Assembly (NCBI RefSeq): GCF_006345805.1
Contig: NC_043004.1
Coordinates: 56,482,001-56,546,000, forward strand
Source of the DNA: Octopus sinensis
Taxonomy: Eukaryota
DNA: 64,000 nucleotides
Direction: 5' to 3'
Positions 20,382 to 44,133 of this stretch are shown here, one piece after another; within the stretch, counting starts at the first letter, position 1, and each line of letters starts with the position of its first letter. The position numbers and the translations under genes were made by a program. The notes under the pieces are model-generated. The model searched no databases, was not told the origin of the DNA, and worked only from the letters and a program-made list of their open reading frames with translations.

Positions 20382-20439
20382 GGCGCAGGAGTGGGTATGT
20401 AGGCACAGGAGTGGCTGTGTGGTAAGTAGCTTCTTACCA
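20382..20439 (+). mobile_element. 5' head of a SINE family A copy split by element 1
   Basis: GGCACAGGAGTGGCTGTGTGGTAAGTAGCTTCTTACCA, preceded by a 20-bp duplicated head start. Confidence 0.85.
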
Positions 20440-22583
20440 GACAGACGTGTTGTTTTTTGCTCCTGCAAATGTCACGTGTTTGAACGTGAAATGTTGAACT
20501 TTTGACTCGGCGACAGGTAAGACGTTCTGTATTTTTAGAAGCATAGTGAAGTTTATTGCTTGCTTAATGTTATTTAGCAGTTAACGTTATCTAGCATTAA
20601 TATTTTTTTGCGGGTAATAGACTTCACTTTACTTCAGATATATTTCAGATATATTGTGCTTTGTGAGGAGGCGTAGCCCCTCCGCAAAAATTAATTTGTT
20701 TGCTTGTGTTTTACTACTTCGCAAGAAAATTATAAAAATAAGCCACTATTGGATTACCTTTCGGACCCATTTTTGTGGCGGTTGTGTTGCAGTTGCGGCG
20801 TTCCAGGTTCAACCCAGGCCGGGAGTACCGCAAGGCCAGAATATTTTTGCTGTGTTTTTTCTGTTTATTAACTTTCTTTTGAACTTCATTTAACCCCCCC
20901 CCCCTTTTGTTTTTTTTCTTTATTGCGACTTTCCGTTAATTTCTTCCCTTCTGTCGTGCTTTCTCCTTTTTGGTTTTTTCAAAAATCAAATTTTATTTGA
21001 CTTTTGAACTTTTTCTTCCTGCTTTTGAGTTTAATTTGAATATATTTTAAAAAAAACATGGCAATGAAAAATAACAAAATTTTGGAGTGGGAAATCATAC
21101 CACCTAAAAAGTGGTTAAAAGACCGTGAAGATAGGAAGGTGGTGTTGAGAACCTACTCCAAGGCACTTGACACCATCGCCCTATTCGAAAAGACGCCAAT
21201 TGAAAAGGAGTTGGAAGAGTATTTGCCAACAATTAAATTCATTTCCAGGGGTGTCAAATATGCAACGGCGTTGTTGCTATTTGACACCCCTGAAGAGGCT
21301 TGCAAATTTGCTAGCAAACCCTTGGAGGGTAAGGAAATCGTATTCCTGCCCACGTACAAAAAAAAGAAATTGATGAAAGCTTGGATCTGCGGACTGCCAC
21401 CCGACATAGAATCCGAGTGGATAGAGGAGACTATCCGCCGGGATCTGGGTGACAGCGAAACTAAGCTCCTCAATGTAAAAGTTCTTCCTGCGGCTGCTTG
21501 GGTTGGATCAAAAGCAATTTTGACCCTGTGGACCCAATCAGCCAATCTGGTTCTTCCAGATTTTTTGAAAATGGCCGGGTGCAGGTACCCGGTGATGCTT
21601 GAGGGTCGCCCCCCTAAGTGTCATCGGTGCTTGGAGTCCGGCCACATAAAGAAGAACTGTCCTCGGGAACAAAATAGGATCCCGGAACAGTTAAGTAAAA
21701 CCCCTCTAGAAGAGGGAACGATAACGGCCGAGAAAGCAGAGGACTCCTCAAACAGAGGCGAAAGAGAAGGTGAGCAACAATGGGTGCTCACCAAAGGATA
21801 ATAGGATGAGGAGAGGAAGGCGAATCTTCCAGCCACGAGGAGACGCACCCTCCCTCAGTTGAAAAGGGAAAAAAAAGAAAAAGAGGAAGAAAAACGGGCT
21901 GTCAGTGTAGCACCGGAATGTCGCGGAACTACGTCGGTTGGGGTTGTGCCACCGACAAGAGAAGGAATACTGTTGGCGGAAACTGTGCCACCAACGAAAG
22001 AGCTGAATGTATTGGTCCTCTTCTATAGAGGAGGAGAAATTGAAAAGTGATGGAAGAGCACTACAAGGGAGCACCTTTAGCCTTCACACAGGACCCCGAA
22101 TGGCCTCCGCAGGTAGCTGTGGAGGCCGTGGCGTTCGACGTGACGCTAGGGCTAAAGGAGCTCAATGAAGATTATAACTTGGTCCCGGGCGACGCGAACT
22201 CGGAACTTGACTACGTTCTGAGGAGGCGTGGTTGATGGTGGAGGGCGCGGGCACAAGCTATTTCGAGGACGATATGTATTATTAGTAATGGACTTAAGTC
22301 CAAAAATTGAAAAATTGTAAGAGGATTAATACCTCGTTTTGTATTAATAATGGACTGCTAAGTCCAAAAATTGGAAAAATTGTAAGAGGTTTAATACCTC
22401 GTTTTGTGTTTATCTTTTTAAAAAAGAACAATGTTTTAGAGAAGCAAAAGTCGGCGGGCGCTTTCTGTCTTCTCCCATCCTTATCATCTTTCTTTCATTA
22501 TCATTCACCTCATTAATGTCCTCGTCCAGCCCGCAAAGCTAACTTAATCTGTGTACTGCCTTTATGGCAAATGTTTTGAAATA
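20440..22583 (+). mobile_element. Element 1: ORF1-only Tx1-type non-autonomous retrotransposon (~2.1 kb)
   Basis: Flanked by AAGTAGCTT.(C/T)(T/C)TACCA duplications (20424-20439 and 22584-22600). It has a 5' UTR, a gag-like ORF1, a short 3' UTR ending AAATAA, and no EN/RT sequence. Confidence 0.85.
21058..22235 (+). pseudogene. ORF1/gag-like protein with CX2CX4HX4C zinc knuckle, disrupted after codon 247
   Basis: LEGRPPKCHRCLESGHIKKNCP. The downstream pieces (21859-22050, 22047-22235) align by eye with the element 2 ORF1 C-terminus. Confidence 0.85.
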
Positions 22584-22978
22584 AAGTAGCTTGTCTACCA
22601 ACCACACTGTTCCAGGTTCAGTCCCACTGCGTCGCACCTTGGGCAAGTGTCTTCTACTATAGCCTCGGGCCGACCAAAGCCTTGTGAGTGGATTTGGTAG
22701 ACGGAAACTGAAAGAAGCCCGTCGTATATATGTATATATATATATATGCGCGTGTGTGTATTTGTGTGTCTGTGTTTGTTCCCTAGCATTGCTTGACAAC
22801 CGATGCTGGTGTGATTATGTCCCCGTTACTTAGCGGTTCGGCAAAAGAGATCGATAGAAAAAGTACTGGGCTTACAAAAAAATAAGTCCCGGGGTCGATT
22901 TGCTCGATTAATGGCGGTGCTCCAGCATGGCCGCAGTCAAATGACTGAAACAAGTAAAAGAGTAAAAGAGTAAAAGTG
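22584..22978 (+). mobile_element. Remainder of the SINE family A copy split by element 1
   Basis: Resumes AAGTAGCTTG..TACCAACCAC..GTTCCAGGTTCAGTCCC and ends (AAAGAGTA)n. Confidence 0.9.
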
Positions 22979-23311
22979 TATACATGCATACACAAGTCTA
23001 TTATACACCATTTTAAAATCGTGATTACCTATCTGTACGTTTGTAACTGTGTGTATGTGAGTATGTGTGCGTTTTTATGTGTGTCTGTGTGTGTCACATC
23101 CTCCCTAATTTTGTAAGATGTGCCCTGTTGCTGTCAAATATTGTAAAAATAAAATTACGTAAAATGTTCAAATTCGGTATTTCCCACTTAAAAGAAAAAT
23201 TGCAGAAATCTGTCCAGATGAAGGGGCCTATCTATTGGGAAAGATATGGTCAGACATGAAATAAGCAAAAGTTTACATAAGTCATGTTATTGTAAAAATT
23301 GCCCCTCAACG

Positions 23312-25891: not shown

Positions 25892-26269
25892 TATACAGTA
25901 TATAAATATATATGTGTATATTTAATGAAATACAGTTCTACCTTTTGCACACCCGCCAATAATCAGCAAAAGCATAGCATCAGATAAAATAGCTTAAGCA
26001 TGAAAGAGACAACTAGACAAGAACATACACTTTGTCATCTCTGTTCAACATGATGTAGCTTAGTAAAGTAAGATTCGAGAGGAATAGTTTCCTACTCAAG
26101 TAGTTCTGTCTGATTAATTAATCAAATGAAGAATCGATTGAATATGTAAACCAAAATGAAACCCAGATGCAGTCCTAAATTATTTGAAATGCATGTATGC
26201 CAAATAAATCTTTGACATCTTTATTCTTTATTTCTCGCTCTCTCCCTCATTCTCTGTATGCATTCCCTC

Positions 26270-26655
26270 TTTTACTCTCTTTTACTTGTTTCAGTCATTT
26301 GACTGTGGCCATGCTGGAGCACCGCCTTTAATCGAGCAACTCGACCGGGACTTATTCTTTGTACTTATTCTATCGGTCTCTTTTGCCGAACCGCTAGATG
26401 ACGGGGACGTAAACTCGTAAACACACCAGCATCGGTTATCAAGCAATGCTAGGGGGACAAACACACACACACATATACACATATATACATATATACTACG
26501 GGCTTCTTTCAGTTTCCGTCTACCAAATCTACTCACAAGGCTTTGGTCGGCCCGAGGCTATAGTAGAAGACACTTGCCCAAGGTGCCACGCAGTCGGACT
26601 GAACCCGGAACCATGTGGTTGGTAAACAAGCTACTTACCACACACCCACTCCTGC
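26270..26655 (-). mobile_element. SINE family A
   Basis: Reverse complement of head, core and tail; target site unoccupied. Confidence 0.9.
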
Positions 26656-28190: not shown

Positions 28191-28666
28191 ATTTTTATTC
28201 CTGTCACCGATCATGTGGTAGGTAATCGTTTTAGAATTAGTATCCCTAATAAAGCACTCTCGCGACTGGGTTAATTGGATAGCCTCTGGAGAGTAAGTCA
28301 AACCAAACTGCTACGTAGGCAAGACCCTTGACAGGACCCACACGGAAGAACTGGAAATGACTTCGTCAGGCAGGGCAGGTGTGTGGGGGGTGCTATTAAC
28401 ATCTCGGCTCAGATGGTACAGGTACTCGTCATATGACTGTATCACAAAATAAACAACAGGATTATAATCGCAGGAAAATAAAACCACGCAATGAAAGCGG
28501 ATGCAGAATGAAATGGAGCAAAGAATATAAATTTGTAGTCAAGTAGAACATTTATGCAAAAAATAACCAAAGAGCACGCGGTCGGGCCGACAGGCACTTC
28601 AGTTTTGGAAAAGTATTGAAATGACTGAAATTGATGTATATAATTTTTTGGGACAGATATACACTT

Positions 28667-28907
28667 ACTCTTTTACTCTTTTAGACTTTTACTTGTTTCA
28701 GTCGTTTGACTATGGCCATGCTGGAGCACCGCCTTTAGTCGAGCAAATCGATCCCAAGACTTATTCTTTGTAAGCCTAATACTTACTCTATCGAAATCTT
28801 TTGCCGAACTCCTATGTTACTGAGACGTAAACACACCAGCATCGGTTGACAACCGATGTTAGGGAGGACAAACACAGACACACGAACATATACACACACA
28901 CACACAT

Positions 28908-28978
<71 letters not shown>

Positions 28979-28983
28979 TATAT

Positions 28984-29037
<54 letters not shown>

Positions 29038-29178
29038 GTACGACGGGCGTCTTTCAGTTTCCGTCTACCAAATCCATTCACAAGGCTCTGGTCGGCCCGA
29101 GGCTTTAATAGAAGTGCCACGCAGTGGGACTGAACCCGGAACCATGTTGGTAAGGAAGCTACTTACCACACAGCCACT
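28667..29178 (-). mobile_element. SINE family A with expanded internal (CA)/(TA) tract
   Basis: Reverse complement of head, core and tail. Confidence 0.9.
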
Positions 29179-30420
29179 CCGAAAACTTAGAAGTAGGTTT
29201 TTATTGAGCAAAGTTGAATTAGTGTCCCTGGAAGTTAAAGTACAAAATATGAAGTTTAACATAGAAGGTAACAGAGATTTCATAATAAAAATGAATCTAC
29301 CCAAGAAAGATGATGATAATACAGAAAATATTGAAATGTGGAGTGAAAGGAGAATCAAGTGATCTAGACATCGAAAAGTTGAATGCAAATGAAGAGGGAG
29401 AAGCCAGATTGATTATCAAAAAATTAAGATATGGATTTCATGATACTCGACTTGATAATATAATGAAATAATATAGTTTAATGATTCAAGACTATTGAAA
29501 AGGTTGCAAGACGCAACGAAAATTTTAGGAAAATAAAAATAAGAAATAAGTGGAAATTTTTACCGGTGAGTGTGTTACATTATAAGGCACAAAAAGAAAA
29601 TGACTCTCCCCAGATACAACAGAATATACTTCAACACACGAACTCAAATAAAGAATCTTGCAAACCAAATCCAAAAGCGAGATATAGTTTAATGATTTTT
29701 TAAATTAAAACTATTCTTGTGGTTATAAAATATCGAGTATGTGATCGTCAATAGTGTATCTTTTGATATATTTCGGAGCACTTTTTGCCCTACTTTGTCT
29801 GTTTCTATTAAAAACGTATTCTGGTTATTGCTAAAGGTATCATTTAATTTATTCAGATTGATATTCTTCGTGTACTAAGATTAAGCGTCATAAAATTAAA
29901 TATGTTTTTACCTTTTATATGTTCGTTCTCTGTGTAGTTATGATCATTCTAAATTAATATGTACTTTTAAAATAAAAGACAACAAATTTTTTCTCCAATA
30001 AATTTAACTTGATAAACAGAGACCTTACACAAGACATTTCTATCCACCGCTGCTCACGGTAAAACTCATAATATTAATACTACTAATAATAATGTAAGCA
30101 AGAATAACAATGAAAATAATTAGCATCGATCTAAAGACTATCACTTCCCGCATGGGAAAGGAAAGTTACAGAGGTTAGCTTTTGTACCATACTTATGGCG
30201 ACATACATTCTGCTTTGGGGAATGGAGATTAAACGATAATACTACATTTTCAATTTCTTATCGTTTTATATTGATTTTTTAATATATATTATTCCTTATG
30301 TTATCTATTATTTTGTTTTCAGAAAGAGTAAGTTGATGAATAGTATTTAAGATTTCAGGTACATGGCAGAGAATTATCATCATCATCATCGTCGTCGCCG
30401 TCGTCGTCACCACCACCACC

Positions 30421-30454: not shown

Positions 30455-30789
30455 TCATCATTATAGCTGTCAATCTGTGAAGTCATACAAGCTGGAGCTC
30501 CGCAACTTAGGTTTAATGAAGTATTTTGGCTGGTTGCAACCCGTTCCTTCAAAATTTTAGTTAACGAGTGTTTTGCTTACCGTGTCTGGATCATGTTGGT
30601 TTTGTGTAATTGCACCTCCTTTTGCTGGGTGTAATAATTATGTTGTATTTTTTTTGTGAACACGGGATTCTTATTCATATTTCCAATTTTAAAAATATTT
30701 TGGATTACGAAAAAAATAATAATAATCGACCAAGAGCAGCGTTTCTTTGACTCAGTTGTAACTCCGATTAGTCAAAGTCTCAGAGGATT

Positions 30790-30980
30790 ATTATTATTAT
30801 TATTATCATCTTTCTTTTCTTCTTCTTTCAAATTTGCTTCTTTCAAATTTACATGGGTCGTAATAGTTCTCACATCGACAATGCTCTTCTCAATACGTGT
30901 GATGTACCAGTTAAGACAATCTTTTGCACTTCTTGCAGGGATCGTAAACCAGGGATCATTCTCATATAATTTTCGGTTCC

Positions 30981-30981
<1 letters not shown>
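30790..30981 (-). mobile_element. 5'-truncated R4/Dong-like non-LTR retrotransposon 3' end in an (AAT)n/(AAG)n tract
   Basis: 30980-30870 encodes GTENYMRMIPGLRSLQEVQKIVLTGTSHVLRRALSM*, which resembles the QK..L.GT.HILR C-terminus of restriction-like-endonuclease elements. It is flanked by TAA-type repeats. Confidence 0.7.
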
Positions 30982-32324: not shown

Positions 32325-33657
32325 ATTTATTTTAATTCTCCGGATTTACTTTCGGTTGCTCATAACATAGTTATTGTTTAAATAACGACAGGTCGTCAAA
32401 TCCCAAATATGCAAATTCAGATATCCACTAATATTTCTAACCCAATTTACACTGTAGCTGAACTTGGCCCCTGACTGAGGGAAGGAACCGAGAGTGTTTT
32501 CAAGAAATATTGAATACAACTGTTAAGGTATGTTGAAACAAGACGTGGAGATAATTTCCACAGCCAACAACATTCCTATGATGGCATACTACTTGGTAGA
32601 TGAGCAGTGCCATAACTGACAGCTGTATTAAGTGTCAGCAATGCCTTTAACAATGTTTCACTTGAGTGCGGCTTGTACAACAACGCAACGAATCTCTTTA
32701 GCGATACCGAGAAGCGTAACCACAAGTATAGCGCAAGATGTCCAACGCAGGTTTTATATACGAGTTAACCTTCCCATGAGGGATACCTTGACAAATACTA
32801 GAGGTCCATCATTCCCATTGAGCTAAGCACTCCAGACCCCAACTAAATCTCAAAATCCCAGTGGATACAAGAAGATATAAGGCTAAATGTATCGAAAATA
32901 TAGGGCAGCTCTCAATACCAGCTTACTCCTCCTTGACTGCAAGTGTAACTAGACTACAAGCAGACCACAATACGTTTGGGACCTTCAATATTTTACCTAA
33001 TTACATTTGAAATAGCGCTAGTGATGTAACTCAAAATGGCTATATACATAAACTTCGATATAAATTATGGATAAATTTTTATCAATTACCATAGGAAGAA
33101 TTTTTTTTAAAATTCGTTTTTCTTCGTGTGAAAACAAATGTTAAGTGATAATAGCGACCAACTACAAATGAAAAGAGGGGATTTATACCAAGAATGAAAA
33201 ATTCTCTGAAATTAAAAAGGAAAAGACAGTATGAGAGGAGATACTTTGACATGTATAGAGTAGAAAACATGTATGGTTTAGAATATTGTGCATGATTTAA
33301 ACGAAAATGTGATTAGACAAACAGCTTGGCCTACCCTTCGATGGATTACCGCATTTCGATTATATCCTTATTTATTATTACAGTATCGCTGATTTTCAAA
33401 TAATACCATTTTCGTATGCACTACGTCCGTCATTCAGTGTGCGTTAGGAAGCATACAGAATAGGTATTTATAGGATTTACCATATGGTGGCGGTGTGAGC
33501 ATATGCCATTTACGCTTCACACTTTTGCCGAGAGCATGTTTTCTTACATGGATTTCCAGTTGCACTTCGTTTACGAGATTAGAAACACTGTACCGAACGG
33601 ACTATATTTCATGTTATGATTTATTCTACGTATTTTTGCTCTGAATCTATATATATA

Positions 33658-33695
33658 GGCGCAGGAGTGGCTGTGTGGTAAGTAGCTTTGCTAAC
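33658..33695 (+). mobile_element. 5' head of a SINE family A copy split by elements 2 and 3
   Basis: GGCGCAGGAGTGGCTGTGTGGTAAGTAGCTTTGCTAAC. Confidence 0.9.
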
Positions 33696-35687
33696 TGCGC
33701 ATGTGCGAGTCAGTGTTGTGTTTGCCACTGAAGCAGTGAAGATGTGCTTTTGAAGCCGTCTTGAATTGAAAACTTTGGAAGCCCCATGTAAGGTAAGATT
33801 CTGTTTTCTGGGTCCAGTGGGAGTTTTTGTTGAGAATTATTTTTTACATGCAGGAAGTCCTACTGGATTCAGAATTCTGATTCTGCCGACATGTGGCAAA
33901 TATATTTTTCTCGCTGAGAAAATTTTTTGGGGCGTATCCGTCTTCGAATTGTGAGAATTGCATTGTGCTGTGAAGAACTACCAATTTTACACCAATTCAT
34001 GTGGAAGTTGTGCGATCCTGGTTCGATTTAGGCCGGGAGTACCAAATGGCCAAAAGGATTTTGCTGTGTTTTTGACTTTCTTTTTAACTTTATTTGACTT
34101 TCTTTTCAACTTTATTTGACTCTCTCCTTTTTTCATTGTGACTTTCTTCGGATTTCCTTTTCTTCTCGTTTTTTAGTTTTATTCTAAATACATTAATTTA
34201 AAAAAAAAACAAAAAAACATGGCAACAAAAGAAACCACCGCTTTGGAATGGGAGGTCGTCCCACCCAAGCAGTGGATTGAAAGTCTTGAGAAGAGGACGG
34301 TGGTCCTACGAACCTATTCTAGGTCGCGTGGAGCCATTGCCCTCTTCGACAGGAATACTATAGAGAAAGAGTTGGGGGACTACCTGCCAACTATAAAATT
34401 TATTTCTCGGGGGACTAAATTTGCAACGGTGTGGTTGCTGTTTGGTACCCCCGAGGAAGCTAGCAGATTTGCTAGCGAGCCACTGGAGGGATATGAAATT
34501 TTGTTCCTCCCCTCGTATTGTGGCAGAAAAGTGAAAAGAGCCTGGGTGTGTGGGCTGCCCCCGGGCACGGAGGCGGAATGAATCGAGAAGACCATCCGGC
34601 GAGGCCTGGGGGATAGCGGGCCCAGACTGCTGAGTGTGAAGGTGGCTCCCGCGGTCGCCTGGGAGGGGTCGAGGGCAACTTTGACCCTGTGGACACCGGT
34701 AGCCGTGGGAGAAATGAAATTCACGGACTTCCTGAGAATGGCTGGGCACAGGTACCCGGTGATACTCGAGGGTCGCCCCCCCAAGTGTCACCTGTGCTTG
34801 AAGCCCGGACATATCAGGAAGAATTGTCCCAGAGGCCGTGGTGGTGCCCCGGAGCAGAGAGGGGAAAAGGCGCCCGCCGCCCCCTCATTGGAGGGGGAGA
34901 CGATGGAAGTCGTGGAGGAGGTTGCCTCCCCGAAAAGAAAGAGAAAGGCGAGCAACAATGGTTGCCCGCCAAAGAACGCTCAAAGGGGCGAAGGGGGATA
35001 GCAATCCCCCGTGTCTGGTGACGGAGTCCTCTGGGTCAGCAGTCTCCCCCAAAAGAAGGAGGAGAAAAAGGAGAGGTCGGACGACTGACGTTTCTGTGTC
35101 GCCGACGGAGCCGCGGGTGGGATGTGTGCCACCCGCGGACAAGGCTCCGCCAGTAGGAAGTGTGCCACTGACGGAGCAGTGTGAGGTCCCTCCCTGTGAA
35201 GAGGAGATGCTTCTCCTCCTTTACCACAAGGGAGGGGAGGTGGAAAGATTCTTGAATGGCTTGGGTGACCGAGAGCGTAAGGGCACGGTCGGCTCAAGTA
35301 GTCCGTTATGGCCTCCGCGGGTAGCTGCGGAAAAAGTAACAGAAGATACTTTGTCAAGGGTCGCAGAGACCTTTGAAAAGAAAGACTTTACTTTTCTCTT
35401 TGCAGGCCCCGACTTGTCGTCGCAGAGTTGTCTGCAGGCGGCAAGACAATTTGCTTCGGGGACCTGACAAGAAGAATTGTTGAACATTTGTTATGTAATT
35501 TGAATCATTGTGAACATTTTATTAAATGTATTTATTGAAACATTGTTTTAGAGAAGCGAAAGTCGGCGGGCGCTTTCGACTTCTCCCATCACCATCTTCA
35601 TCCACCACCACCATCATCCATTAATGTCCTTGTCCAGCCCGTAGCTACTACTCTGTGTGCTGCCCTAGTGGCAAATTATATAAAATA
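33696..35687 (+). mobile_element. Element 2: ORF1-only Tx1-type non-autonomous retrotransposon (~2.0 kb)
   Basis: Bounded by AAGTAGCTT(T)GCTAAC duplications (33680-33695, 35688-35703). ORF1 and both UTR motifs are homologous to element 1; no EN/RT sequence. Confidence 0.88.
34219..35467 (+). pseudogene. ORF1/gag-like CCHC protein with one nonsense codon (34579-34581) and one frameshift near 34990
   Basis: MATKETTALEWEVVPPK...LEGRPPKCHLCLKPGHIRKNCP; collinear with element 1 ORF1. Confidence 0.85.
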
Positions 35688-36093
35688 AAGTAGCTTGCTA
35701 ACCTCACTGACTGAAGAGTGACTTTGCTTACCGTACTACGGTTTGGACGCGTTTTCTTCCCGGTAAGAATTTTGCTGTGTTGTTAATTGTTGAATTTCTA
35801 CTACTGAAAATTTGTCTTTAAACGTTGCTGAACTGTCTTGTTCTCCGGTTTTACCGGGGAATAATTGGATAATTTCTTACCGTTGAACTGTTAGCCATTG
35901 TGGCTTTTTTATTTACGTGACTATATATAGTCCTGCCAGACTATTTTCGTGCCCCTCCCCCGAATGGGGGTGGGAATTGGAATTTTTGAACTGCTTTTTT
36001 GAACTACTTTGGAAGAAAAACTTTCTATAGGTTTCCCAGTTTTGTGGGAAACCAATACTCGTAATTTTTGTGTTGTCTAATTTCAACAGAATA

Positions 36094-37496
36094 ATGTCTG
36101 TTGAAATTATTCACGAAAGTAGTGCTCTTGAGGAGAGCAATGTTAAAAAGTTTTCTGAGGTAGCCGCAGTGGCTACCGAGAAAATTGACATCGATGTCAA
36201 CCAGCTCGTCGAGCTATTTAAAAGAATGCAAGAGGGGGTGGTGATGTTAAAATATCACCCTCCGCCAGTATCGTGGAGACCGAGAAGCGGACCGTAGTGT
36301 TTAAAACTTTCTGTCCACAAAGCAGAAGGTTCAAACACTTTGAAAAAAGTACCATCGAGAAATGCCTGTCCCCGATTTGGAAGGACATCGTGTACGTCGC
36401 CAGGGGACGGGCATATGGCACTGTGGATGTCCGCTTCTCAGGGGAAGAAGTGGCCCGCGGGCATTCTGTAAACCCCCTAAAAACCAAAGAGGTGGTACTT
36501 TTCCCAAGCTATAGGGGACGCAGGACGTCCCGGGTCAGGATTGTAGAAGCCCCGCCGGAAGTAGATCCGGTAGAGGTAGTGGCCGCCCTATTATATAAAA
36601 GGGCGGACAAAATAAAAATACTAGAAGTAACATGCTCTACCCCTCGATTTTGGCTCGGGCGTAACATTAATATATTAATTCAAGGAACAGCGGAGGACCT
36701 ACAGCTCCTTCCTGAGAGGGTGCTCGTGGGCGAGAACGTAGCCCTCAGGGTACAGGTCGAAGGCCGAAAACCCACCTGTTACGCCTGCGGCAAAAAGGGC
36801 CACATTCGTGTAGACTGTCCAGACAAGCAAAAGAAACCGCAGACACCAGGCCCCTCAGATAATAAAAAAGTCCCTACCCTTGCAAACACACCTACCCCTA
36901 CAAAAACAAAAAATCCCACTCCTGCTGTTAATGGGCCAACCCCAAAACAGACTGAAGAAAAAACCCAGCCCTCGCACTCACAAACCCCTACACTATTAAA
37001 ACCTCCCACCCCACTAAAAACTGCGGCGCCTACCGAACAAACTATTGCTACCCCAGACGATACCATGGAGGTATCAGAGGGGGGATTTACACCAGTTCGT
37101 AAAAGAATTCGTGCAGCATCCCCGTCCACATCCCCTACAAAAAATAATAAAAACAAAGACACACCACAGACACGAAAAAAAAAATCCCGCTCAACTGGCC
37201 CAGAAAAAGAAGACAAAAAAGAAAATGAACTCATATTAATTGAATTCGACACACAAGACAAATACTTAAACGATATTGTGGTTCAGCATCAGTCAGCAAG
37301 ACTGTACAACAAATACAAAGATCGAAATAGACACGCGTGGATTGCGGAAACAACGTTCAAACAATTAAAAGACAGACACCCAAACGCCATCCGGGATGTC
37401 GCGAACTTGCCGGACTATCTGAAGAAAGAGGAGAAAGAAGGGGCCCACAAACGTGTGGTGAGGTCGGCTCCCACCTCTCCAACGAAATGTAAGTAG
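36094..37496 (+). pseudogene. Element 3 ORF1 copy a (~467 aa if one homopolymer frameshift near 36235 is repaired)
   Basis: MSVEIIHESS...VEGRKPTCYACGKKGHIRVDCP...; has G5 where copy b has G6. Confidence 0.85.
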
Positions 37497-37513
37497 AACT
37501 TTTACTTTTTGTA

Positions 37514-38530
37514 ATGGCTTCGTTTAACCTTGGTTGTTTATCGGCGCCTAGAGGGCTTTCTCGTGACGTCGAAGACTTTAGTGATATTAGGGGACTTTAA
37601 TGCTATCGTTGACGTACACATCGATAGCCTTGGCTCGATCTATAGGAAAGTGAACTCACGTCTCGTGGATCTGCTTAAGCGGTTTCAGCTAGCAGATCGT
37701 TACAGACTTGACCATCCGAACGTCCCAGAGTGGACCTGGATGAGTGGCGACGGAAGGTTCAAGTCTTATCTAGACAGGATAGTGATAAGAACTAGAGATA
37801 AGTCTAGTTTTAGTTGTCCACAGCTCGTCCAGGTGCCCTATATTGACCATAGAATGGTCACGTGTAGACTGGACATAGATAGCACACTTAAGATAGGAAC
37901 CGGCTACTGGAAGCTGAACAAGTCTATTTTGACACGCGAGGCATACCGTAGCCGGATTAAGGTGTTAGTGCAGAGGGCGTTAACCGGAGCCGTGGTTAAT
38001 AACCGGTGGTGGTTCGCCCTCAAAAGAGCCATTCGATTCGAGTCCATTAGATTTAGTAAACAACTAAGACTAGATAGGGCTAGAATAGAAGGGCAACTAG
38101 TTAAGAACTTAGAGGAGGCGTTGAGGTTGGGCTCTGCATCTCACATTTTAGCGGCGAGAACGGCATTAGACCGTCACCTCAAAACCAAACATGAGGGATG
38201 TAGAGTTCGGGCTAAAGTACGAGCATTGGGCCGTGAGGGAATTAATGTTGCCGGATGGGCCCGTACGATAGAAACACAGCGTGGAAACGATGTCACAATT
38301 GGGTCTCTTGTTGATGAAAACGGATGCACGATCAAGAAGCGGAACGAGATGTGTGAGGCACTTCACAAGCACTTCGCCGAGTTGTTCGGGAGGTGCGGGA
38401 CGCTGGATCATGGTGAGGCCCTTAGGGACTTCCTGTCTGGTGGCCCGCGCCTCCCTACACGAGAGGCTGAGTGCTGTGAAGGGCCAATCACAGCCGAGGA
38501 AGTAATCGAGGTATTGGGCAAGTGCCCCGG
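37514..38530 (+). pseudogene. Element 3 ORF2 copy a, partial (start MASFNLGCL, internal deletion, ends at the duplication junction)
   Basis: Jumps at TTTA microhomology (37537-37540) to sequence matching 40525 onward. Confidence 0.85.
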
Positions 38531-38859
38531 TAAGAATTTTGCTGTGTTGTTAATTGTTGAATTTCTACTACTGAAAATTTGTCTTTAAACGTTGCTGAAC
38601 TGTCTTGTTCTCCGGTTTTACCGGGGAATAATTGGATAATTTCTTACCGTTGAACTGTTAGCCATTGTGGCTTTTTATTTACGTGACTATATATAGTCAT
38701 GCCAGACTATTTTCGTGCCCCTCCCCCGAATGGGGGTGGGAATTGGAATTTTTGAACTGCTTTTTTGAACTACTTTGGAAGAAAAACTTTCTATAGGTTT
38801 CCCAGTTTTGTGGGAAACCAATATTCGTAATTTTTGTGTTGTCTAATTTCAACAGAATA

Positions 38860-40200
38860 ATGTCTGTTGAAATTATTCACGAAAGTAGTGCTCTTGAGGA
38901 GAGCAATGTTAAAAAATTTTCTGAGGTAGCCGCAGTGGCTACCGAGAAAATTGACATCGATGTCAACCAGCTCGTCGAGCTATTTAAAAAAATGCAAGAG
39001 GGGGGTGGTGATGTTAAAATATCACCCTCCGCCAGTATCGTGGAGACCGAGAAGCGGACCGTAGTGTTTAAAACTTTCTGTCCACAAAGCAGAAGGTTCA
39101 AACACTTTGAAAAAAGTACCATCGAGAAATGCCTGTCCCCGATTTGGAAGGACATCGTGTACGTCGCCAGGGGACGGGCATATGGCACTGTGGATGTCCG
39201 CTTCTCAGGGGAAGAAGTGGCCCGCGGGCATTCTGTAAACCCCCTAAAAACCAAAGAGGTGGTACTTTTCCCAAGCTATAGGGGACGCAGGACGTCCCGG
39301 GTCAGGATTGTAGAAGCCCCGCCGGAAGTAGATCCGGTAGAGGTAGTGGCCGCCCTATTATATAAAAGGGCGGACAAAATAAAAATACTAGAAGTAACAT
39401 GCTCTACCCCTCGATTTTGGCTCGGGCGTAACATTAATATATTAATTCAAGGAACAGCGGAGGACCTACAGCTCCTTCCTGAGAGGGTGCTCGTGGGCGA
39501 GAACGTAGCCCTCAGGGTACAGGTCGAAGGCCGAAAACCCACCTGTTACGCCTGCGGCAAAAAGGGCCACATTCGTGTAGACTGTCCAGACAAGCAAAAG
39601 AAACCGCAGACACCAGGCCCCTCAGATAATAAAAAAGTCCCTACCCTTGCAAACACACCTACCCCTACAAAAACAAAAAATACCACTCCTGCTGTTACGG
39701 TGCCAACCCCAAAACAAACTGAAGAAAAAACCCAGCCCTCGCACTAACAAACCCCTACATTATTAAAACCTCCCACCCCCCTAAAAACTGCGGCGCCTAC
39801 CGAACAAACTATTGCTACCCCAGACGATACCATGGAGGTATCAGAGGGGGGATTTACACCAGTTCGTAAAAGAATTCGTGCAGCATCCCCGTCCACATCC
39901 CCTACAAAAAATAATAAAAACAAAGACACACCACAGACACGAAAAAAAAAATCCCGCTCAACTGGCCCAGAAAAAGAAGACAAAAAAAATGATGAACTCA
40001 TATTAATTGAATTCGACACACAAAACAAATACATAAACGATATTGTGGTTCAGCATCAGTCAGCAAGACTGTACAACAAATACAAAGATCGAAATTGACA
40101 CGCGTGGATTGCGGAAACAACGTTCAAACAATTAAAAGACAGACACCCAAACGCCATCCGGCATATCGCGAACTTGCCGCACTATCTGAAGAAAGAGGAG
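38860..40200 (+). pseudogene. Element 3 ORF1 copy b (nonsense at 39745-39747; C-terminus deleted)
   Basis: Near-identical to copy a; TCA to TAA change. Confidence 0.85.
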
Positions 40201-43200
40201 TTCGAAGTGGAAGCAGGCTTGTTTCCTCGAAGACCTCAGATCACATGATATACATGTGATGGTTGCTACAGAGACCAAGCTGGACAGCCTACAAACCTTC
40301 TCGCCTCTCCTGAATAGCTACGAGAAAATCATGTCTCCTGGCCAGACCGGAGGGCGAGGGGGCGTAGTGGTACTGATCCGTAAAGACTTGGCTCTGCAGA
40401 CAAGTACAGTCTATGTAGACCCAGAAGGTGGGCTGGTCGTCCTTGATGTGACATACAGCAGAAAGGCCTTCAGGTTGATCGGACTCTATGCACCTTGTGC
40501 TAGAGGTTTCCAAACTGATTTTTATCGGCGCCTAGAGGGCTTTCTCGTGACGTCGAAGACTTTAGTGATATTAGGGGACTTTAATGCTATCGTTGACGTA
40601 CACATCGATAGCGTTGGCTCGATCTATAGGAAAGTGAACTCACGTCTCGTGGATCTGCTTAAGCGGTTTCAGCTGGCAGATCGTTACAGACTTGACCCTC
40701 CGAACGTCCCAGAGTGGACCTGGATGAGTGGCGACGGAAGGTTCAAGTCTTATCTAGACAGGATAGTGATAAGAACTAGAGATAAGTCTAGTTTTAGTTG
40801 TCCACAGCTCGTCCAGGTGCCCTATACTGACCATAGAATGGTCACGTGTAGACTGGACATAGATAGCACACTTAAGATAGGAACCGGCTACTGGAAGCTG
40901 AACAAGTCTATTTTGACACGCGAGGCATACCGTAGCCGGATTAAGGTGTTAGTGCAGAGGGCGTTAACCGGAGCCGTGGTTAATAACCGGTGGTGGTTCG
41001 CCCTCAAAAGAGCCATTCGATTCGAGTCCATTAGATTTAGTAAACAACTAAGACTAGATAGGGCTAGAATAGAAGGGCAACTAGTTAAGAACTTAGAGGG
41101 AGCGTTGAGGTTGGGCTCTGCATCTCACATTTTAGCGGCGAGAACGGCATTAGACCGTCACCTCAAAACCAAACATGAGGGATGTAGAGTTCGGGCTAAA
41201 GTACGAGCATTGGGCCGTGAGGGAATTAATGTTGCCGGATGGGCCCGTACGATAGAAACACAGCGTGGAAACGATGCCACATTTGGGTCTCTTGTTGATG
41301 AAAACGGATGCACGATCAAGAAGCGGAACGAGATGTGTGAGGCACTTCACAAGCACTTCGCCGAGTTGTTCGGGAGGTGCGGGACGCTGGATCATGGTGA
41401 GGCCCTTAGGGACTTCCTGTCTGGTGGCCCGCGCCTCTCGACACGAGAGGCCTAGTGCTGTGAAGGGCCAATCACAGTAATCGAGGAAGTAATCGAGGTG
41501 TTGGGAAAGTGCCCCGGGGAGAAATCACCGGGTCTCGATGGTCTGCCCTATGAATTTTATAAAAGTATGCCAGACTTGTTCGGGCACCTACTGGCTAGCG
41601 TCTACGCCAACTGGCAGCAGAATGGGAGAATTTCCAAGTCTGAAGCCGGGGGGCGGTGACGTTGATCAGGAAGGACCCGAACAAGGGAACGAGATAGGGA
41701 ACTTCAGGCCCATAACTCTGTTGAACACAAAGTTAAAGATTCTGGCCAAGGTGCTAGCAAAAAGGTTGGCGCGGGTCGTGGACAAACTTGTCGGGGAAGC
41801 GCAAACGTGCGCTATCCCCGGCAGAACGATCTCCGACAATCTCCACCTTATACGCTACTCCTTAGAGAGGGTGGGGAAGCTTTCTGGCGCAGGGGGAGCA
41901 CTGGTACATTTAGACCAGTCCAAAGCATTTGATAGGGTCGACCATCGGTACTTGGCGGCGGTCCTCGGAGTGGCTGGCCTAGGCCCGACCTTTCGAGGTT
42001 GGATCGCTGCTTTGTATAGCGACATCGAGTCTGTAGTCAAGGTGAACGGTTCCTTTTCGAAGCCGTTCAGGATCGAGCGTTCAGTTCGTCAAGGGTGTCC
42101 CCTGTCCTCGTTCCTATACGTATTGGCTCTTGAGCCTTTGCTGCGGAAGTTGGAGGCACTAGGGGGCGCGCCGCATGATCTATGGTGTGGAAGAGGAGCT
42201 ACGGCGTATGCGGATGACACCTCCATCATCGTGGCAGACGAAGGCCAGCTTCCAGTGGTGGAAGAGGCCATCTAAAGCTACGAGGCGGTGGCAGGAGCAA
42301 AGGTTAACAAGGACAAGTCAGTCGGTTTGCAACTCGGCACCTGGAGGGGCAAGCCGATGCCGTCCAATAACGTCGTAGGGCGTTGGACGGAAGGTCCTGT
42401 TAAGCTGCTCGGAGTCTGGTTCGGGCCAGACCTCCAGATTGAGAAAAATTGGAGTGAGGTGGCCAACAAGGTGACCGCTCTAACCCAGACCTGGTCTGGG
42501 CGGGCGTTTTCCCTGCTAGGGAAGGCGGAGGTGGTGCAGATGTTTATAGCATCAGTAATCATCTACCGTCTGACCGTGGTGCCTTGCCCCGATTTGTGGC
42601 TGAACAAGTTGGAGGGAATCCTTTTCCGATTTTTGTGGAAAGGTGGAAAGCCACTTGTAAAGCGCTCTGTCTGCTGCCAGAAACCGCTAAAGGGTGGGCT
42701 TGGGATGCCTTGGCTGAGGATGCGAAAACTCGCGTTAAGGTTGAGGCACCTCTGGCTTTACCTGGATGGAGAGCAGGTGTGGTCACCGCACGTCCGGTTC
42801 TACCTTCCCCAGTTAACATCCCTAACGGACATCGGTGCATGGATCAAGCGGGGACCTAAACTGAGTGAATGGCATTTGGAGTGCCATCAGGCGCTCCAGC
42901 TACTATCTCGGGTGGGCAACGCCGGCCACAGGAGTTCCACCACGGATTTCTATAGCGGGTTAGTTGAGATTAAGTCCGAAGACGCCTTGGGGGAGACCCT
43001 GGGCTACGATGAAAATCAGTTGGTCAACCTGTTCCGGAGGACGTTCGGGCCGGGGTATCTGGATAATTACCAGAAATCCCTGGCCTGGCAGTGTTTCCGT
43101 GCGGCTTTACCTGTTCGCGACAAGCTGTCAAGGCACGGTAGTGCCGTCTCGCCGACATGCCCGCGATGTGAGCAGGATAGGGAGACCGTCTTGCACGCAT

Positions 43201-43559
43201 TCGTGGAGTGTCCGGAGTTATCGGGACTGATAGCTTTTGTTGAACAACTGTTGTCAGTGATGGGAAGTGTACAGCTATCAGCTGAGTCTATCATCGAGAT
43301 TGTGCCGCCCCCTTTCCTTAACAGGGAAAGAAAGGCTTGTTTTTTCTGTGTAGTAGCCATACTGAAAGAAACAGTATGGAAGACGCGTACGAAAGGTATA
43401 GTGACAGGCACCTTTGTCACCGGCCAGGGGTTGATTAACTTTTTTAGTTACCACCTCAGTAGCAAAATCAGGCTGGAGAAGAGGTGTCTGTCACGAAATA
43501 TGTTTGTGAAAAGATGGAAGCCTGTGGTGTGCAAGATGGGTATGTTTGGCACCAGGTAA
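40201..43559 (+). pseudogene. Element 3 ORF2 copy b: APE endonuclease-reverse transcriptase-zinc finger, disrupted
   Basis: ORFs 40256-41455, 41538-42275 and 42288-43559 are collinear; only the first ~15 codons are missing. Confidence 0.92.
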
Positions 43560-43787
43560 GAGTGACCGGATCAGAAAGTAAAGGTTCTACCCGGATGGCT
43601 GGGTGTCCGTCCTTCGACATGATCATTAATATTTTTAAACATTGTCTTCGTAAAATTCATTGTTTATAATCTTATCCGTAATTTCATTCGAAAATTGCAA
43701 CTGTGTTAAGCTACTTCACCCTTTATATTTGTCTGTCCTTATTTGTCCCCTCTTTGTAAATGCCTAAATGGCAAATTATATGAAATA

Positions 43788-44133
43788 AAGTAGCTTGCTA
43801 ACCAACCACATGGTTCCGGGTTCAGTCCCACTGCGTGGCATCTTGGGCAAGTGTCGACCAATGCCTTGTGAGTGGATTTGGTAGACGGAAACTGAAAGAA
43901 GCCTGTTGTATATATGTATATATATGTATATGTATGTATGTGTATGTGTTTGTGTGTCTGTGTTTGTACCCCTAGCATTTCTTGACAACCGATGCTGGTG
44001 TGTTTACGTCCCCGTCACTTAGCGGTTCGGCAAAAGAATAAGTCCCGCGGTCGATTTGCTCGACTAAAGGCGCTGCTCCAGCATGGCCGCAGTCAAATGT
44101 CCGAAACACATAAAAGAGTAAAGAGTAAAAGAG
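43788..44133 (+). mobile_element. Remainder of the SINE family A copy split by elements 2 and 3
   Basis: AAGTAGCTTGCTAACCAACCACATGGTTCCGGGTTCAGTCCC...(AAAGAGTA)n. Confidence 0.92.

What the first reader, a model, noticed from the sequence alone, without database searches (positions are those of the whole stretch)
20382..43803. Tx1-clade retrotransposons that appear to target one position in a SINE's tRNA-derived head
Seen: three different elements (1, 2, 3) at two separate loci all interrupt SINE family A at the same site, between its A box and B box. All lie in the same orientation as the SINE, with ~16-bp duplications of AAGTAGCTTGCT(T/A)ACC (20424/22584; 33680/35688/43788). At locus 2 all three duplicates carry the same GCTAAC variant, which supports them being TSDs of that copy. 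Known: Tx1-clade APE elements include sequence-specific families (Tx1 into a DNA transposon, Keno into U2 snRNA genes, Mutsu into 5S rDNA, Dewa into tRNA-array spacers, Kibi/Koshi into microsatellites). Inference: this lineage uses an abundant SINE as a dispersed safe-harbour target and breaks its Pol III promoter on insertion. I do not know of a description of this in cephalopods but cannot search.
Basis: partly seen in the sequence, partly recalled or inferred. Interest (0 to 1): 0.9.

Follow-up and report, generated by a model that had tools for sequence, protein, structure and literature searches.

The report
Octopus LINEs that target one SINE site
Several related L1/Tx1-type jumping genes in an octopus genome insert at the same nucleotide position of an abundant short repeat (a SINE), which adds a SINE to the kinds of target known for site-specific retrotransposons.

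Summary
Three different non-LTR elements (E1 20440-22583, E2 33696-35687, E3 35704-43787) interrupt two copies of one SINE family. All three sit at the same position and in the SINE's orientation, with 15-17 bp duplications of AAGTAGCTTGCT(T/A)ACC. Joining the flanks rebuilds an uninterrupted SINE at both loci.

E3 encodes ORF1 (CCHC), an AP-endonuclease, RT and zf-RVT. E1 and E2 are a colinear 2-kb family with ORF1 only. The three share only their last ~28 nt.

An ORF1 search, blind to flanks, brought in two Octopus sinensis loci. In both, an E2-like 5' end abuts the same SINE head at the same position. That makes five junction sets at four unrelated loci.

A sister family in the window (E4/E5, 53-70% aa identity to E3) and one O. 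sinensis copy lie in (ATCT)n microsatellites.

My reading is a sequence-specific L1/Tx1-type lineage whose endonuclease nicks the SINE head one base after the A-box-like motif. The L1 superfamily is shown. Tx1 clade membership is inferred from published octopus LINE trees and was not tested here.

No genome-wide count was possible. Tx1 elements that target other transposons are known, and I found no report of a SINE target. I rate it a new member of a known kind, of moderate interest.

The parts
20400..20439 (+). Locus 1: 5' part of the SINE-A copy (head with the A-box-like motif TGGCTGTGTGG). The upstream duplicate AAGTAGCTTCTTACCA is at 20424-20439.
   Evidence: SINE positions 3-43; joined flanks rebuild the SINE.
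20440..22583 (+). Element 1 (E1): a 2.1-kb element with ORF1 only. It has a 5'UTR, ORF1 at 21058-21801 (RRM-like region plus CCHC knuckle) and a 3' end ...TGGCAAATGTTTTGAAATA.
   Evidence: zf-CCHC, below the Pfam cutoff in E1; colinear with E2, no ORF2 homology.
22584..22982 (+). Locus 1: remainder of the same SINE-A copy. It starts with the downstream duplicate AAGTAGCTTGTCTACCA (22584-22600), followed by the B-box-like motif GGTTCAGTCCC.
33656..33695 (+). Locus 2: 5' part of a second SINE-A copy. The first duplicate AAGTAGCTTTGCTAAC is at 33680-33695.
33696..35687 (+). Element 2 (E2): a 2.0-kb element with ORF1 only, of the same lineage as E1 (~70% nt, 63% aa in ORF1). ORF1 starts at 34219 and has an in-frame stop at codon 121. 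The 5' end is TGCGCATGTGCGAGTCAGTG and the 3' end is ...TGGCAAATTATATAAAATA.
35688..35703 (+). Middle copy of the target-site duplication (AAGTAGCTTGCTAACC), between E2 and E3.
   Evidence: family D5.
35704..43787 (+). Element 3 (E3): an autonomous-type element, now defective. ORF1 with CCHC is present twice (36273-37496 and 38836-40206). The other pieces are APE 40256-41455, RT 41538-42275 and a zf-RVT C-terminal part 42288-43559. A 2.77-kb internal duplication joins 35759-38536 to 38526-41523. The 3' end is ...TGGCAAATTATATGAAATA.
43788..44137 (+). Locus 2: remainder of the SINE-A copy, starting with the third duplicate AAGTAGCTTGCTAACC (43788-43803).
55060..55482 (-). Intact, unoccupied SINE-A copy, used as the reference. 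It carries the same GCTAAC subfamily variant. Other unoccupied copies with the site are 6088-6479 (-), 26267-26655 (-), 28666-29180 (-) and the diverged 6912-7266 (+).
55820..61911 (+). Element 4 (E4): a sister family with ORF1, APE, RT and zf-RVT, 53-70% aa identical to E3. It is flanked on both sides by (CTAT)n/(ATCT)n (55783-55819 and 61912-62013). The 3' end is ...TGTGGCTAATAAAGAAAC.
62014..64000 (+). Element 5 (E5): a 5'-truncated copy of the E4 family (RT onward). It begins right after the (ATCT)n tract and runs off the window end.

Best explanation
[quoted passage not shown] Their integration machinery recognises a short sequence in the head of one abundant octopus SINE.

**Proposed steps**
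1. Inferred: the element's endonuclease nicks the bottom strand at 5'-...AGCTACTT^ACCACAGCC-3'. On the top strand this lies between GGT and AAGTAGC, one base after the A-box-like motif.
2. Inferred: the freed 3'-OH primes reverse transcription on the element RNA. That RNA ends in a conserved ~28-nt tail (TGCC-loop-GGCAAAT...AAATA). Its last bases may pair with the target (AAG).
3. Shown as outcome: the top strand is cut 15-17 bp downstream, after GCTAAC / ACC / ACCA. This gives the 15-17 bp duplication and full-length 5' ends.
4. Shown as outcome: the intact site is regenerated on each side, so a second element can insert there. This yields the tandem E2-TSD-E3 arrangement.
5. Inferred: the 2-kb E1/E2 family has ORF1 only and no endonuclease or RT. 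It must borrow ORF2 protein from an autonomous SINE-targeting relative, and the shared 3' tail is the likely handle.

**Consequence, inferred from position only:** the A-box-like motif stays upstream and the B-box-like motif is moved 2-10 kb away, so that SINE copy loses its internal Pol III promoter. The element gains a large supply of presumably harmless landing sites.
For: - **Same junction, three families, two loci.** Three elements that BLASTN does not align across families, at two loci with unrelated outer flanks, share one junction and one orientation.
- **3' ends.** All three TGGCAAAT...AAATA ends in the window are followed by AAGTAGCTTG.
- **Empty sites.** Joined flanks rebuild a continuous SINE at both loci.
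- **Independent replication.** Two O. sinensis loci found by ORF1 homology alone both have the SINE head ending at GCTTCC / GCTTCCAC, directly followed by an E2-like 5' end (alignment A2).
- **Domain content.** E3 has zf-CCHC, Exo_endo_phos, RVT_1 and zf-RVT.
- **Nearest solved structures.** Human L1 ORF2p is the best match for both RT (1.4e-18) and endonuclease (1.4e-8).
- **Sister families.** E4/E5 and an O. sinensis copy lie in (ATCT)n. A JGI relative ends at (ATT)n.
- **Published classification.** RTClass1 and a tree put O. sinensis and O. bimaculoides L1-superfamily LINEs in Tx1, sister to Tx1_XT and Koshi (PMC10294476 supplement).
- **Known Tx1 traits.** 16-bp TSDs, tandem copies sandwiching a TSD, and transposons as targets are described for Tx1-Mar (PMC4494074).
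- **E1/E2.** They are colinear over their whole length and have no ORF2 homology.
Against: - Only five junction sets were seen. The three in the window were picked because they looked alike.
- Both O. sinensis copies have lost their 3' parts, so only their 5' junctions count.
- No genome-wide tabulation was possible. No octopus DNA was found in the viral or prokaryotic collections. My metagenome scan used too loose a pattern and returned only chance hits.
- Every copy seen is defective, so current activity is unknown.
- Tx1 clade membership was not tested by phylogeny. E3 RT scores only slightly better against a curated bivalve L1-Tx1 ORF2 (83 bits) than against human L1 ORF2p (71 bits).
- The nick position, RNA-target pairing, trans-mobilisation and loss of the Pol III promoter are inferences.
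- tRNA detectors do not recognise the SINE head.
Confidence: 0.8

Rival explanations
1. Chance nesting. The SINE is very abundant, so unrelated LINE insertions fall into SINE copies by chance, without any site preference.
For: SINE-A is dense: eight copies in 64 kb. SINEs make up ~11.6% of the O. vulgaris genome (PMC13282606).
Against: Chance predicts scattered positions and both orientations. All five junctions fall within a 3-nt range of one SINE position and in one orientation. At the window's density of sites the estimate is ~1.6e-4 per insertion. All three matching 3' ends in the window are at the site.
Confidence: 0.01
2. One ancestral insertion was copied. A SINE that already carried an element was spread by segmental duplication, by gene conversion between SINE copies, or by retrotransposition of the composite. 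The junctions would then not be independent events.
For: Ectopic conversion between dispersed repeats occurs. Both O. sinensis copies lack the SINE 3' half, so they do not prove a complete insertion there.
Against: E1 and E2 are ~70% identical, and E3 shows no nucleotide similarity to either by BLASTN. At least three separate insertions are therefore needed anyway. Flanks outside the SINE are unrelated at all four loci. The host SINE copies belong to different subfamily variants. The lone 16-bp duplicate between E2 and E3 is the signature of a second insertion into a regenerated site.
Confidence: 0.04
3. Targeting by tethering, not by DNA sequence. The integration complex is drawn to SINE heads by bound Pol III factors (TFIIIC/TFIIIB), as for Ty3 or Dictyostelium TRE elements. 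The fixed position would reflect the geometry of that complex.
For: The site lies between the A-box-like and B-box-like motifs. Retrotransposon targeting to Pol III genes through transcription factors is well known (review PMC5911963, listed but not read).
Against: Tethered elements insert upstream or downstream of the Pol III gene over a range of positions, not inside it at one nucleotide. Sister families 53-70% identical sit in (ATCT)n or (ATT)n microsatellites, which have no Pol III factors. That points to endonuclease sequence recognition. The host SINE heads vary outside the core target.
Confidence: 0.07
4. The 5' SINE head is carried by the element RNA. Copies would be transcribed from the upstream SINE start or by read-through. 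The head would be re-copied at each transposition, and the 5' junction restored by homology, as proposed for R1/R2-type elements and for Tx1-Mar families with U1 or U2 heads. Targeting would still be real, but the top-strand cut and the TSD would be partly apparent.
For: Both O. sinensis copies keep the SINE head but no SINE 3' half. Some Tx1-Mar families carry target-derived or snRNA-derived 5' heads, and co-transcription with the target is discussed in PMC4494074. The sequence AATAAA spans the 3' junction (GAAATA|AAGTAGC), so the element end and the target overlap.
Against: At locus 2 the piece between E2 and E3 is only the 16-bp duplicate, not a 43-nt head. The 5' halves share subfamily variants with their own 3' halves. 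The 5' junction positions vary by 1-3 nt, as expected for a staggered cut.
Confidence: 0.08

Closest known systems
Tx1-Mar families of crocodilians (Tx1 clade), which insert into the Mariner-N4_AMi DNA transposon, and their SINEU passengers (Kojima 2015, PMC4494074)
   Same: An APE-type LINE lineage that uses a dispersed transposon as a fixed target. It has ~16-bp TSDs, tandem copies sandwiching a TSD, several related families sharing a target, and non-autonomous elements sharing the same target.
   Different: The target here is a SINE with a tRNA-like head, hit inside the Pol III promoter region. The non-autonomous partners are 2-kb elements that encode ORF1, not snRNA-headed SINEs. The host is a cephalopod.
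Tx1L of Xenopus laevis, inserted in the Tx1D piggyBac-type transposon
   Same: It is the founding case of a Tx1-clade element whose target is another mobile element (as cited in PMC4494074). In a published tree, Tx1_XT lies in the group sister to the octopus Tx1 clade.
   Different: The target class differs (DNA transposon versus SINE).
Kibi and Koshi (Tx1 clade, teleosts), specific for (TC)n and (TTC)n microsatellites
   Same: The sister family in this window (E4/E5) and an O. sinensis copy lie in (ATCT)n, and another relative ends at (ATT)n. KoshiTn1 is in the reference group sister to the octopus clade.
   Different: E1-E3 have a complex 16-nt-plus target rather than a simple repeat. Specificity for (ATCT)n rests on three copies.
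Keno (U2 snRNA genes), Mutsu (5S rDNA) and Dewa (tRNA-array spacers), Tx1 clade
   Same: Sequence-specific Tx1 elements aimed at small-RNA-related multicopy sequences.
   Different: Those targets are functional gene arrays of low or moderate copy number. Here the target is a dispersed, very abundant retroposon.
Ty3 (yeast), TRE5/TRE3 (Dictyostelium) and Dada DNA transposons: mobile elements aimed at tRNA or other Pol III genes
   Same: They exploit Pol III-type sequences as gene-poor landing sites.
   Different: Ty3 and TRE elements are tethered by Pol III factors and land outside the gene. Dada elements are DNA transposons. Here an APE-type LINE lands at one nucleotide inside a tRNA-like SINE head.
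HAL1-type 'half-L1' elements (ORF1-only L1 derivatives in mammals; from my own knowledge)
   Same: E1 and E2 keep a 5'UTR, ORF1 and the 3' tail but have no ORF2. They have diversified as a lineage.
   Different: E1 and E2 are site-specific. Their relation to an autonomous parent is unknown, since their ORF1 is only ~28% identical to E3 ORF1.

Membership tests
L1 superfamily (L1/Tx1 group) non-LTR retrotransposons | AP-type endonuclease N-terminal to a non-LTR reverse transcriptase in ORF2 | tested here: met
   In E3, Exo_endo_phos scores 1.1e-9 and RVT_1 scores 1.3e-23, in that order. E4 has the same domains. The best solved relatives for both domains are human L1 ORF2p and L1-EN.
L1 superfamily (L1/Tx1 group) non-LTR retrotransposons | C-terminal Cys/His zinc-binding motif after the RT (zf-RVT) | tested here: met
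   PF13966 scores 2.7e-9 in E3 and 3.2e-8 in E5.
L1 superfamily (L1/Tx1 group) non-LTR retrotransposons | Separate ORF1 with a nucleic-acid-binding module (here a CCHC knuckle after an RRM-like region) | tested here: met
   zf-CCHC scores 1.9e-5 in E3 ORF1 and 0.0044 in E1, which is below the Pfam cutoff. The ORF1s of E1, E2, E3 and E4 are homologous. The RRM fold itself was not tested.
Tx1 clade | The RT domain groups with Repbase Tx1 references (Tx1_XT, Keno, Koshi, Mutsu) in a phylogeny or in RTclass1 | tested here: inconclusive
   No reference RT set was available. E3 RT scores 83 bits (36% identity) against a curated bivalve L1-Tx1 ORF2, and 70.7 bits against human L1 ORF2p. Indirect support: RTClass1 and the tree in PMC10294476 place the sampled O. 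sinensis and O. bimaculoides L1-superfamily LINEs in Tx1. L1-Tx1 is the only L1-like class listed for O. vulgaris.
Tx1 clade | Target-sequence preference, with TSDs of about 16 bp and frequent tandem insertions separated by one TSD (typical of the clade, not universal) | tested here: met
   for the SINE target. for the (ATCT)n sister family. The comparison is with PMC4494074.
Target-specific LINE family in Kojima's operational sense | One sequence type is found in more than 20% of the flanks of the family's copies genome-wide | tested here: inconclusive
   All copies seen meet it. That is 3 of 3 3' ends in the window and 2 of 2 O. sinensis copies found blind to flanks. However n=5, and no genome-wide search was possible.
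tRNA-derived SINE (the target) | Head with A and B boxes of a Pol III internal promoter at tRNA-like spacing | tested here: met
   Read directly from the sequence. TGGCTGTGTGG fits TRGCNNAGTGG at 10 of 11 positions. GGTTCAGTCCC fits GGTTCRANNCC at 10 of 11 positions. The two motifs are ~32 nt apart. Function was not tested.
tRNA-derived SINE (the target) | Head recognisable as a tRNA (cloverleaf or covariance model) | tested here: not met
   ARAGORN finds no tRNA in the window. Rfam gives no tRNA match even at E<=10 on an intact copy. The head is at best a degenerate tRNA derivative.
ORF1-only non-autonomous LINE derivative (for E1 and E2) | ORF1 and the LINE termini are present, ORF2 is absent, and the structure is shared by diverged copies | tested here: met
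   tblastn with E3 APE, RT and C-terminal pieces finds nothing in E1 or E2. E1 and E2 are colinear end to end at ~70% nt. The O. sinensis copies have the same layout. Trans-mobilisation cannot be tested with these tools.

The most novel reading that the evidence does not exclude
A whole radiation of octopus Tx1-type families may be specialised on a single nucleotide position of the genome's most abundant SINE. It would include at least one autonomous family and a long-lived parasite lineage with ORF1 only. Close sisters at 53-70% aa identity are instead specialised on microsatellites. If this holds genome-wide, two things follow. It would be the first SINE-specific LINE lineage, with a huge supply of landing sites, and each insertion would disable a Pol III promoter. 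It would also offer a natural pair of AP-endonucleases whose specificity switched between a complex 16-nt-plus site and a simple repeat. That pair could be used to map what sets LINE target choice.
Probability: 0.5. Interest if true: 0.6.

Novelty: new member of a known kind. Interest (0 to 1): 0.45.

Why it matters
**New target class.** Site-specific LINEs are the natural models for how an AP-type endonuclease plus RT machine picks a DNA address. They are also being explored as guides for targeted insertion. Targets named for the Tx1 clade in the papers I read are snRNA and 5S genes, microsatellites, satellites, DNA transposons and LTR elements. A SINE would be a new class of target. It is also one with very many copies, so target supply does not limit the element.

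**Octopus genome biology.** SINEs and LINEs are the largest repeat classes in octopus, and L1-Tx1 is among the recently active LINE groups (PMC13282606). A LINE that specifically disables SINE promoters is an interaction between two parasites. It could shape both populations, and it would confound repeat annotation and age estimates.

**Annotation.** At least one RefSeq 'gene' in O. sinensis (LOC115225585) is the ORF1 of such an element.

Tried and rejected
- **Metagenome scan for the 3' end.** I scanned metagenome contigs with TGGCAAATKWTWTRAAATA to tabulate downstream bases. The pattern was too AT-rich and degenerate.
- **SINE head in other collections.** GGCTGTGTGGTAAGTAGCTTGCT gave 0 hits in viral contigs and 0 in genome contigs, so these hold no octopus DNA.
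- **Exact look-up of E1 ORF1.** It is not on record.
- **ORF2 C-terminal and RT searches.** The best relatives are only 55-70% identical and carry no informative names. They come from JGI and ENA short contigs, Argonauta hians and Acanthosepion.
  - Contigs L123 and L124 stop before the 3' end.
  - L128 ends ambiguously.
  - P0004 is not on record.
  - L127 has no SINE-A and no clear element end.
- **Clade assignment by database names.** No hit carried a Tx1 name.
- **Clade assignment by score.** E3 leans only 12 bits toward a curated bivalve L1-Tx1 ORF2 over human L1. The stored part of the published alignment supplement holds no Tx1 or octopus sequences.
- **tRNA identity of the SINE head.** ARAGORN and Rfam both found nothing.
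- **Rejected reading: E3 as two target-site insertions.** The internal junction has no TSD. It is a CCCGG microhomology joining element position ~2833 to position ~56.
- **Rejected reading: the SINE is mobilised by these elements.** Its tail (...AAGAGTAAAAGAGTAAAGAGTAT) is unlike their 3' end.

Full report
**1. What is in the sequence**

The window is AT-rich animal DNA full of one SINE family, which I call SINE-A. I used the intact copy at 55482-55060 (minus strand) as reference and masked its internal (TA)n(TG)n tract. BLAST then finds eight copies:
- 4717-5125 (+), 5'-truncated
- 6479-6088 (-)
- 6912-7266 (+), diverged
- 26655-26267 (-)
- 29180-28666 (-)
- 55482-55060 (-)
- two split copies, at 20400-20439 / 22584-22982 and at 33656-33695 / 43788-44137, both (+)

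In both split copies the 5' piece ends at SINE position 41-43 and the 3' piece restarts at position 27. So 15-17 bp are present twice.

The junctions read as follows:
- Locus 1, 5' side: ...GGCTGTGTGGTAAGTAGCTTCTTACCA|GACAGACG...
- Locus 1, 3' side: ...TGGCAAATGTTTTGAAATA|AAGTAGCTTGTCTACCAACCACA
- Locus 2, 5' side: ...GGTAAGTAGCTTTGCTAAC|TGCGCATGTGCG...
- Locus 2, between the elements: ...TGGCAAATTATATAAAATA|AAGTAGCTTGCTAACC|TCACTGACTG...
- Locus 2, 3' side: ...TGGCAAATTATATGAAATA|AAGTAGCTTGCTAACCAACCACA

I joined the flanks and removed one duplicate. The result aligns straight through the junction to three intact SINE copies at both loci. Both halves at locus 2 carry the same subfamily variants (GCTAAC, GGCATC, CCAATGCC) as the copy at 55482.

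The 3'-end motif TGGCAAATn6AAATA+AAG occurs exactly three times in the window, against 0.13 expected. Every occurrence sits at this SINE site.

**2. Are the events independent?**

E1 and E2 align at only ~70% identity in ORF1 and 78% in the last 150 nt. E3 shows no BLASTN similarity to either; by eye it shares only a ~28-nt 3' tail with them. The 1 kb outside the SINEs is unrelated between the two loci. At least three separate insertions are therefore required.

At the window's own density of sites (seven copies with the site), a random insertion has about a 1.6e-4 chance of hitting the same position and orientation.

**3. What the elements are**

*E3.* It encodes these pieces:
- an ORF1 with a CCHC knuckle
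- an AP-type endonuclease (Exo_endo_phos, 1.1e-9)
- an RT (RVT_1, 1.3e-23)
- a C-terminal zf-RVT domain (2.7e-9)

The closest solved proteins for both the RT and the endonuclease are human LINE-1 ORF2p and L1-EN, ahead of R2. E3 is defective: ORF2 is split by a frameshift and a stop. A 2.77-kb stretch (35759-38536) is repeated at 38526-41523 at 97-100% identity, joined at a CCCGG microhomology with no TSD. Two origins fit. The RT may have switched template during reverse transcription. Alternatively, a deletion may have fused two tandem copies.

*E1 and E2.* These are colinear 2-kb units, each with a 5'UTR, ORF1 and 3'UTR (tblastx). Neither has any similarity to endonuclease or RT. Their ORF1 is 63% identical between them and ~28% identical to E3 ORF1. 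They form a diversified non-autonomous lineage with ORF1 only.

**4. Independent replication outside the window**

ORF2-based protein searches gave only 55-70% relatives from short metagenome contigs, Argonauta hians and a cuttlefish.

A profile of E1 and E2 ORF1 gave two Octopus sinensis proteins. Their loci are L125 (CM016886.1) and L126 (CM016865.1). This search knew nothing about flanks.

In both loci a SINE-A head is followed directly by an E2-like 5' end:
- L126: ...GCCGTGTGGTAAGAAGTTTGCTTCCAC|TGCGCATGTGCGAGTAAGTG
- L125: ...GGCTGTGTGGTAAGTAGCTTGCTTCC|TGTGCATGCGTTGATTAG

See, and alignment A2. Upstream flanks differ from each other and from the window.

Both copies have lost their 3' part. 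No SINE 3' half lies directly after either copy; L126 has none downstream, and L125 has only a short SINE 3'-end fragment (positions 326-392) about 10 kb further on. Only the 5' junction is informative there.

The total is five junction sets at four unrelated SINE loci, from one or two genomes.

**5. The lineage is made of target-specific families**

*E4 and E5 in the window.* At 55820-61911 lies E4, with ORF1, APE, RT and zf-RVT. It is 53-70% aa identical to E3. It is flanked by (CTAT)n on the left and (ATCT)n on the right. Right after that tract comes a 5'-truncated second copy, E5, which runs off the window.

*Copies elsewhere.*
- In O. sinensis L126, a 170-nt 5'-truncated copy of the E4 family lies inside (ATCT)n.
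- A JGI metagenome relative ends ...TGTGGCCAATAAAAGAAATC and is followed by (ATT)n.
- Another O. sinensis relative (L125, 5-634) and the Argonauta copies end in AATAAAGAAAT-type tails next to other sequence.

*Shared 3' tail.* All these 3' tails share CTGTGT..(T/A/G)GCC-loop-GGC(A/T/C)AAT...AAA. The small hairpin shows a covarying outer pair: U-A in three sequences, A-U in two as RNAalifold aligned them (three when paired by eye), G-C in one. Its predicted energy is weak, so this is only a hint of a common RT recognition element.

*Junction overlap.* In E1-E3, AATAAA is completed across the junction (GAAATA|AAG). The last bases of the element and the first bases of the target therefore cannot be told apart, and the true TSD may be 12-14 bp.

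**6. Mechanism**

The simplest account is target-primed reverse transcription started by a sequence-specific endonuclease. The 3' junction puts the bottom-strand nick at 5'-GCTACTT^ACCACA-3'. That is one base 3' of the A-box-like TGGCTGTGTGG. The 5' junctions put the top-strand break 15-17 nt downstream.

The A-box-like motif stays upstream of the insert. The B-box-like GGTTCAGTCCC is moved 2-10 kb away. That this kills Pol III transcription, and that the SINE acts as a safe harbour, are inferences from position.

E1 and E2 must be mobilised in trans. The shared 3' tail is the candidate handle. Their autonomous parent was not seen.

The rivals are scored in the Rival explanations section. Briefly:
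- Chance nesting fails on the fixed position and orientation.
- Spread of one ancestral insertion fails on the three unalignable families and the unrelated flanks.
- Pol III-factor tethering cannot be excluded. It fits poorly with single-nucleotide precision inside the promoter and with microsatellite-specific sisters.
- A SINE head carried by the element RNA would change only how the 5' junction forms.

**7. Clade and novelty**

Membership in the L1 superfamily is shown. Tx1 clade membership could not be tested by phylogeny, because I had no reference RT set.
- E3 RT scores 83 bits against a curated bivalve L1-Tx1 ORF2 taken from the PMC10294476 supplement, against 71 bits for human L1 ORF2p. 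This is only a weak lean.
- In that paper, RTClass1 labels O.sinensis_4, _50 and _124 as L1/Tx1.
- Its tree puts the O. sinensis and O. bimaculoides L1-superfamily LINEs sister to a group of Tx1_XT, Tx1-1_CPB, Tx1-2_PM, KoshiTn1 and L.fortunei_1.
- The only RTClass classes listed for O. sinensis are RTE, R4, CRE, Tx1 and CR1.
- The O. vulgaris repeat paper lists L1-Tx1 as the only L1-like group, with 13 recently active families.

Tx1 is therefore the likely clade by elimination.

Kojima (2015) documents Tx1 families that target piggyBac, Mariner and Harbinger transposons, LTR elements, satellites, microsatellites and U2, U5 and 5S genes. He also describes 16-bp TSDs and tandem copies sandwiching a TSD. 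The behaviour seen here is that of a known kind.

In four full-text searches I found no report of a SINE as the target, or of this in cephalopods. Repbase Reports and subscription journals are not in that library.

**8. Verdict**

This is a new member, with a new target class, of the known target-specific Tx1-type LINEs.

Confidence that the SINE site is a true preferred target is about 0.8. The decisive genome-wide flank count could not be run here.

Noticed in passing
window 55783-64000 (+): A sister LINE family lies in a microsatellite. E4 (55820-61911) is flanked on both sides by (CTAT)n/(ATCT)n. A 5'-truncated second copy, E5, starts at ~62014 right after the repeat. A third, 170-nt copy of this family lies inside (ATCT)n in O. 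sinensis (L126 32100-32266).
   Followed up: partly
window 35759-38536 and 38526-41523: E3 contains a 2.77-kb internal direct duplication covering the 5'UTR, ORF1 and part of the endonuclease, at 97-100% identity. The first copy lacks ~217 bp. The junction is a CCCGG microhomology with no TSD. It could be an RT template switch, a deletion between two tandem copies, or an assembly artefact.
   Followed up: partly
L125 10001-10846 (Octopus sinensis CM016886.1): The annotated O. sinensis protein 'uncharacterized protein LOC115225585' (P0182, 281 aa) is the ORF1 of an E1/E2-type element inserted in a SINE head. It is a transposon ORF annotated as a host gene. A second O. sinensis gene model ('K02A2.6-like', P0183) spans 26 kb and includes part of another such ORF1.
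   Followed up: partly
window 22550-22583, 35654-35687, 43754-43787, 61879-61911; L126 32234-32266; L001 8252-8283 and 8617-8650; L002 1986-2019: All 3' tails share a 4-bp hairpin ~15 nt from the end. Its outer pair covaries: TGCC/GGCA in the SINE-targeting elements, AGCC/GGCT in the (ATCT)n family and one Argonauta copy, and GGCC/GGCC in a JGI relative. The predicted energy is weak (-1.8 kcal/mol consensus).
   Followed up: partly
window 22578-22590, 35682-35694, 43782-43794: The polyadenylation-signal-like hexamer AATAAA is completed across the element/target junction (GAAATA|AAGTAGC). In the sister families AATAAAG lies wholly inside the element tail. This suggests 3'-end/target microhomology, and it makes the TSD boundary ambiguous by ~3 nt.
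   Followed up: no
window 20380-20399: Just upstream of the locus 1 SINE there is an extra partial copy of the first ~20 nt of the SINE head: TAGGCGCAGGAGTGGGTATG, then TAGGCACAGGAGTGGCTG.... The origin of this short tandem duplication is unknown.
   Followed up: no
window 33696-33715; L126 15742-15761; L125 9489-9506: E2-type elements begin with a near-palindrome, TGCGCATGTGCGAG (TGTGCATGCG in L125). It resembles an NRF1-type GCGCATGCGC site. This may be part of an internal promoter.
   Followed up: no
L001 8234-8650 (Argonauta hians BAAFZT010000001.1): The Argonauta relative (56% aa identity to E3) is followed ~120 nt downstream by a second, 5'-truncated copy of its own 3'UTR. The spacer contains a B-box-like GGTTCAATC. 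This looks like repeated insertion into one small region, with the target undefined.
   Followed up: no
window 47561-48407 (-), 12691-13206 (+), 28856-29362 (+), 30656-31162 (+): ORFs of 168-265 aa elsewhere in the window have no Pfam match. The 28856-29362 ORF overlaps a SINE copy. They are probably not genes.
   Followed up: partly
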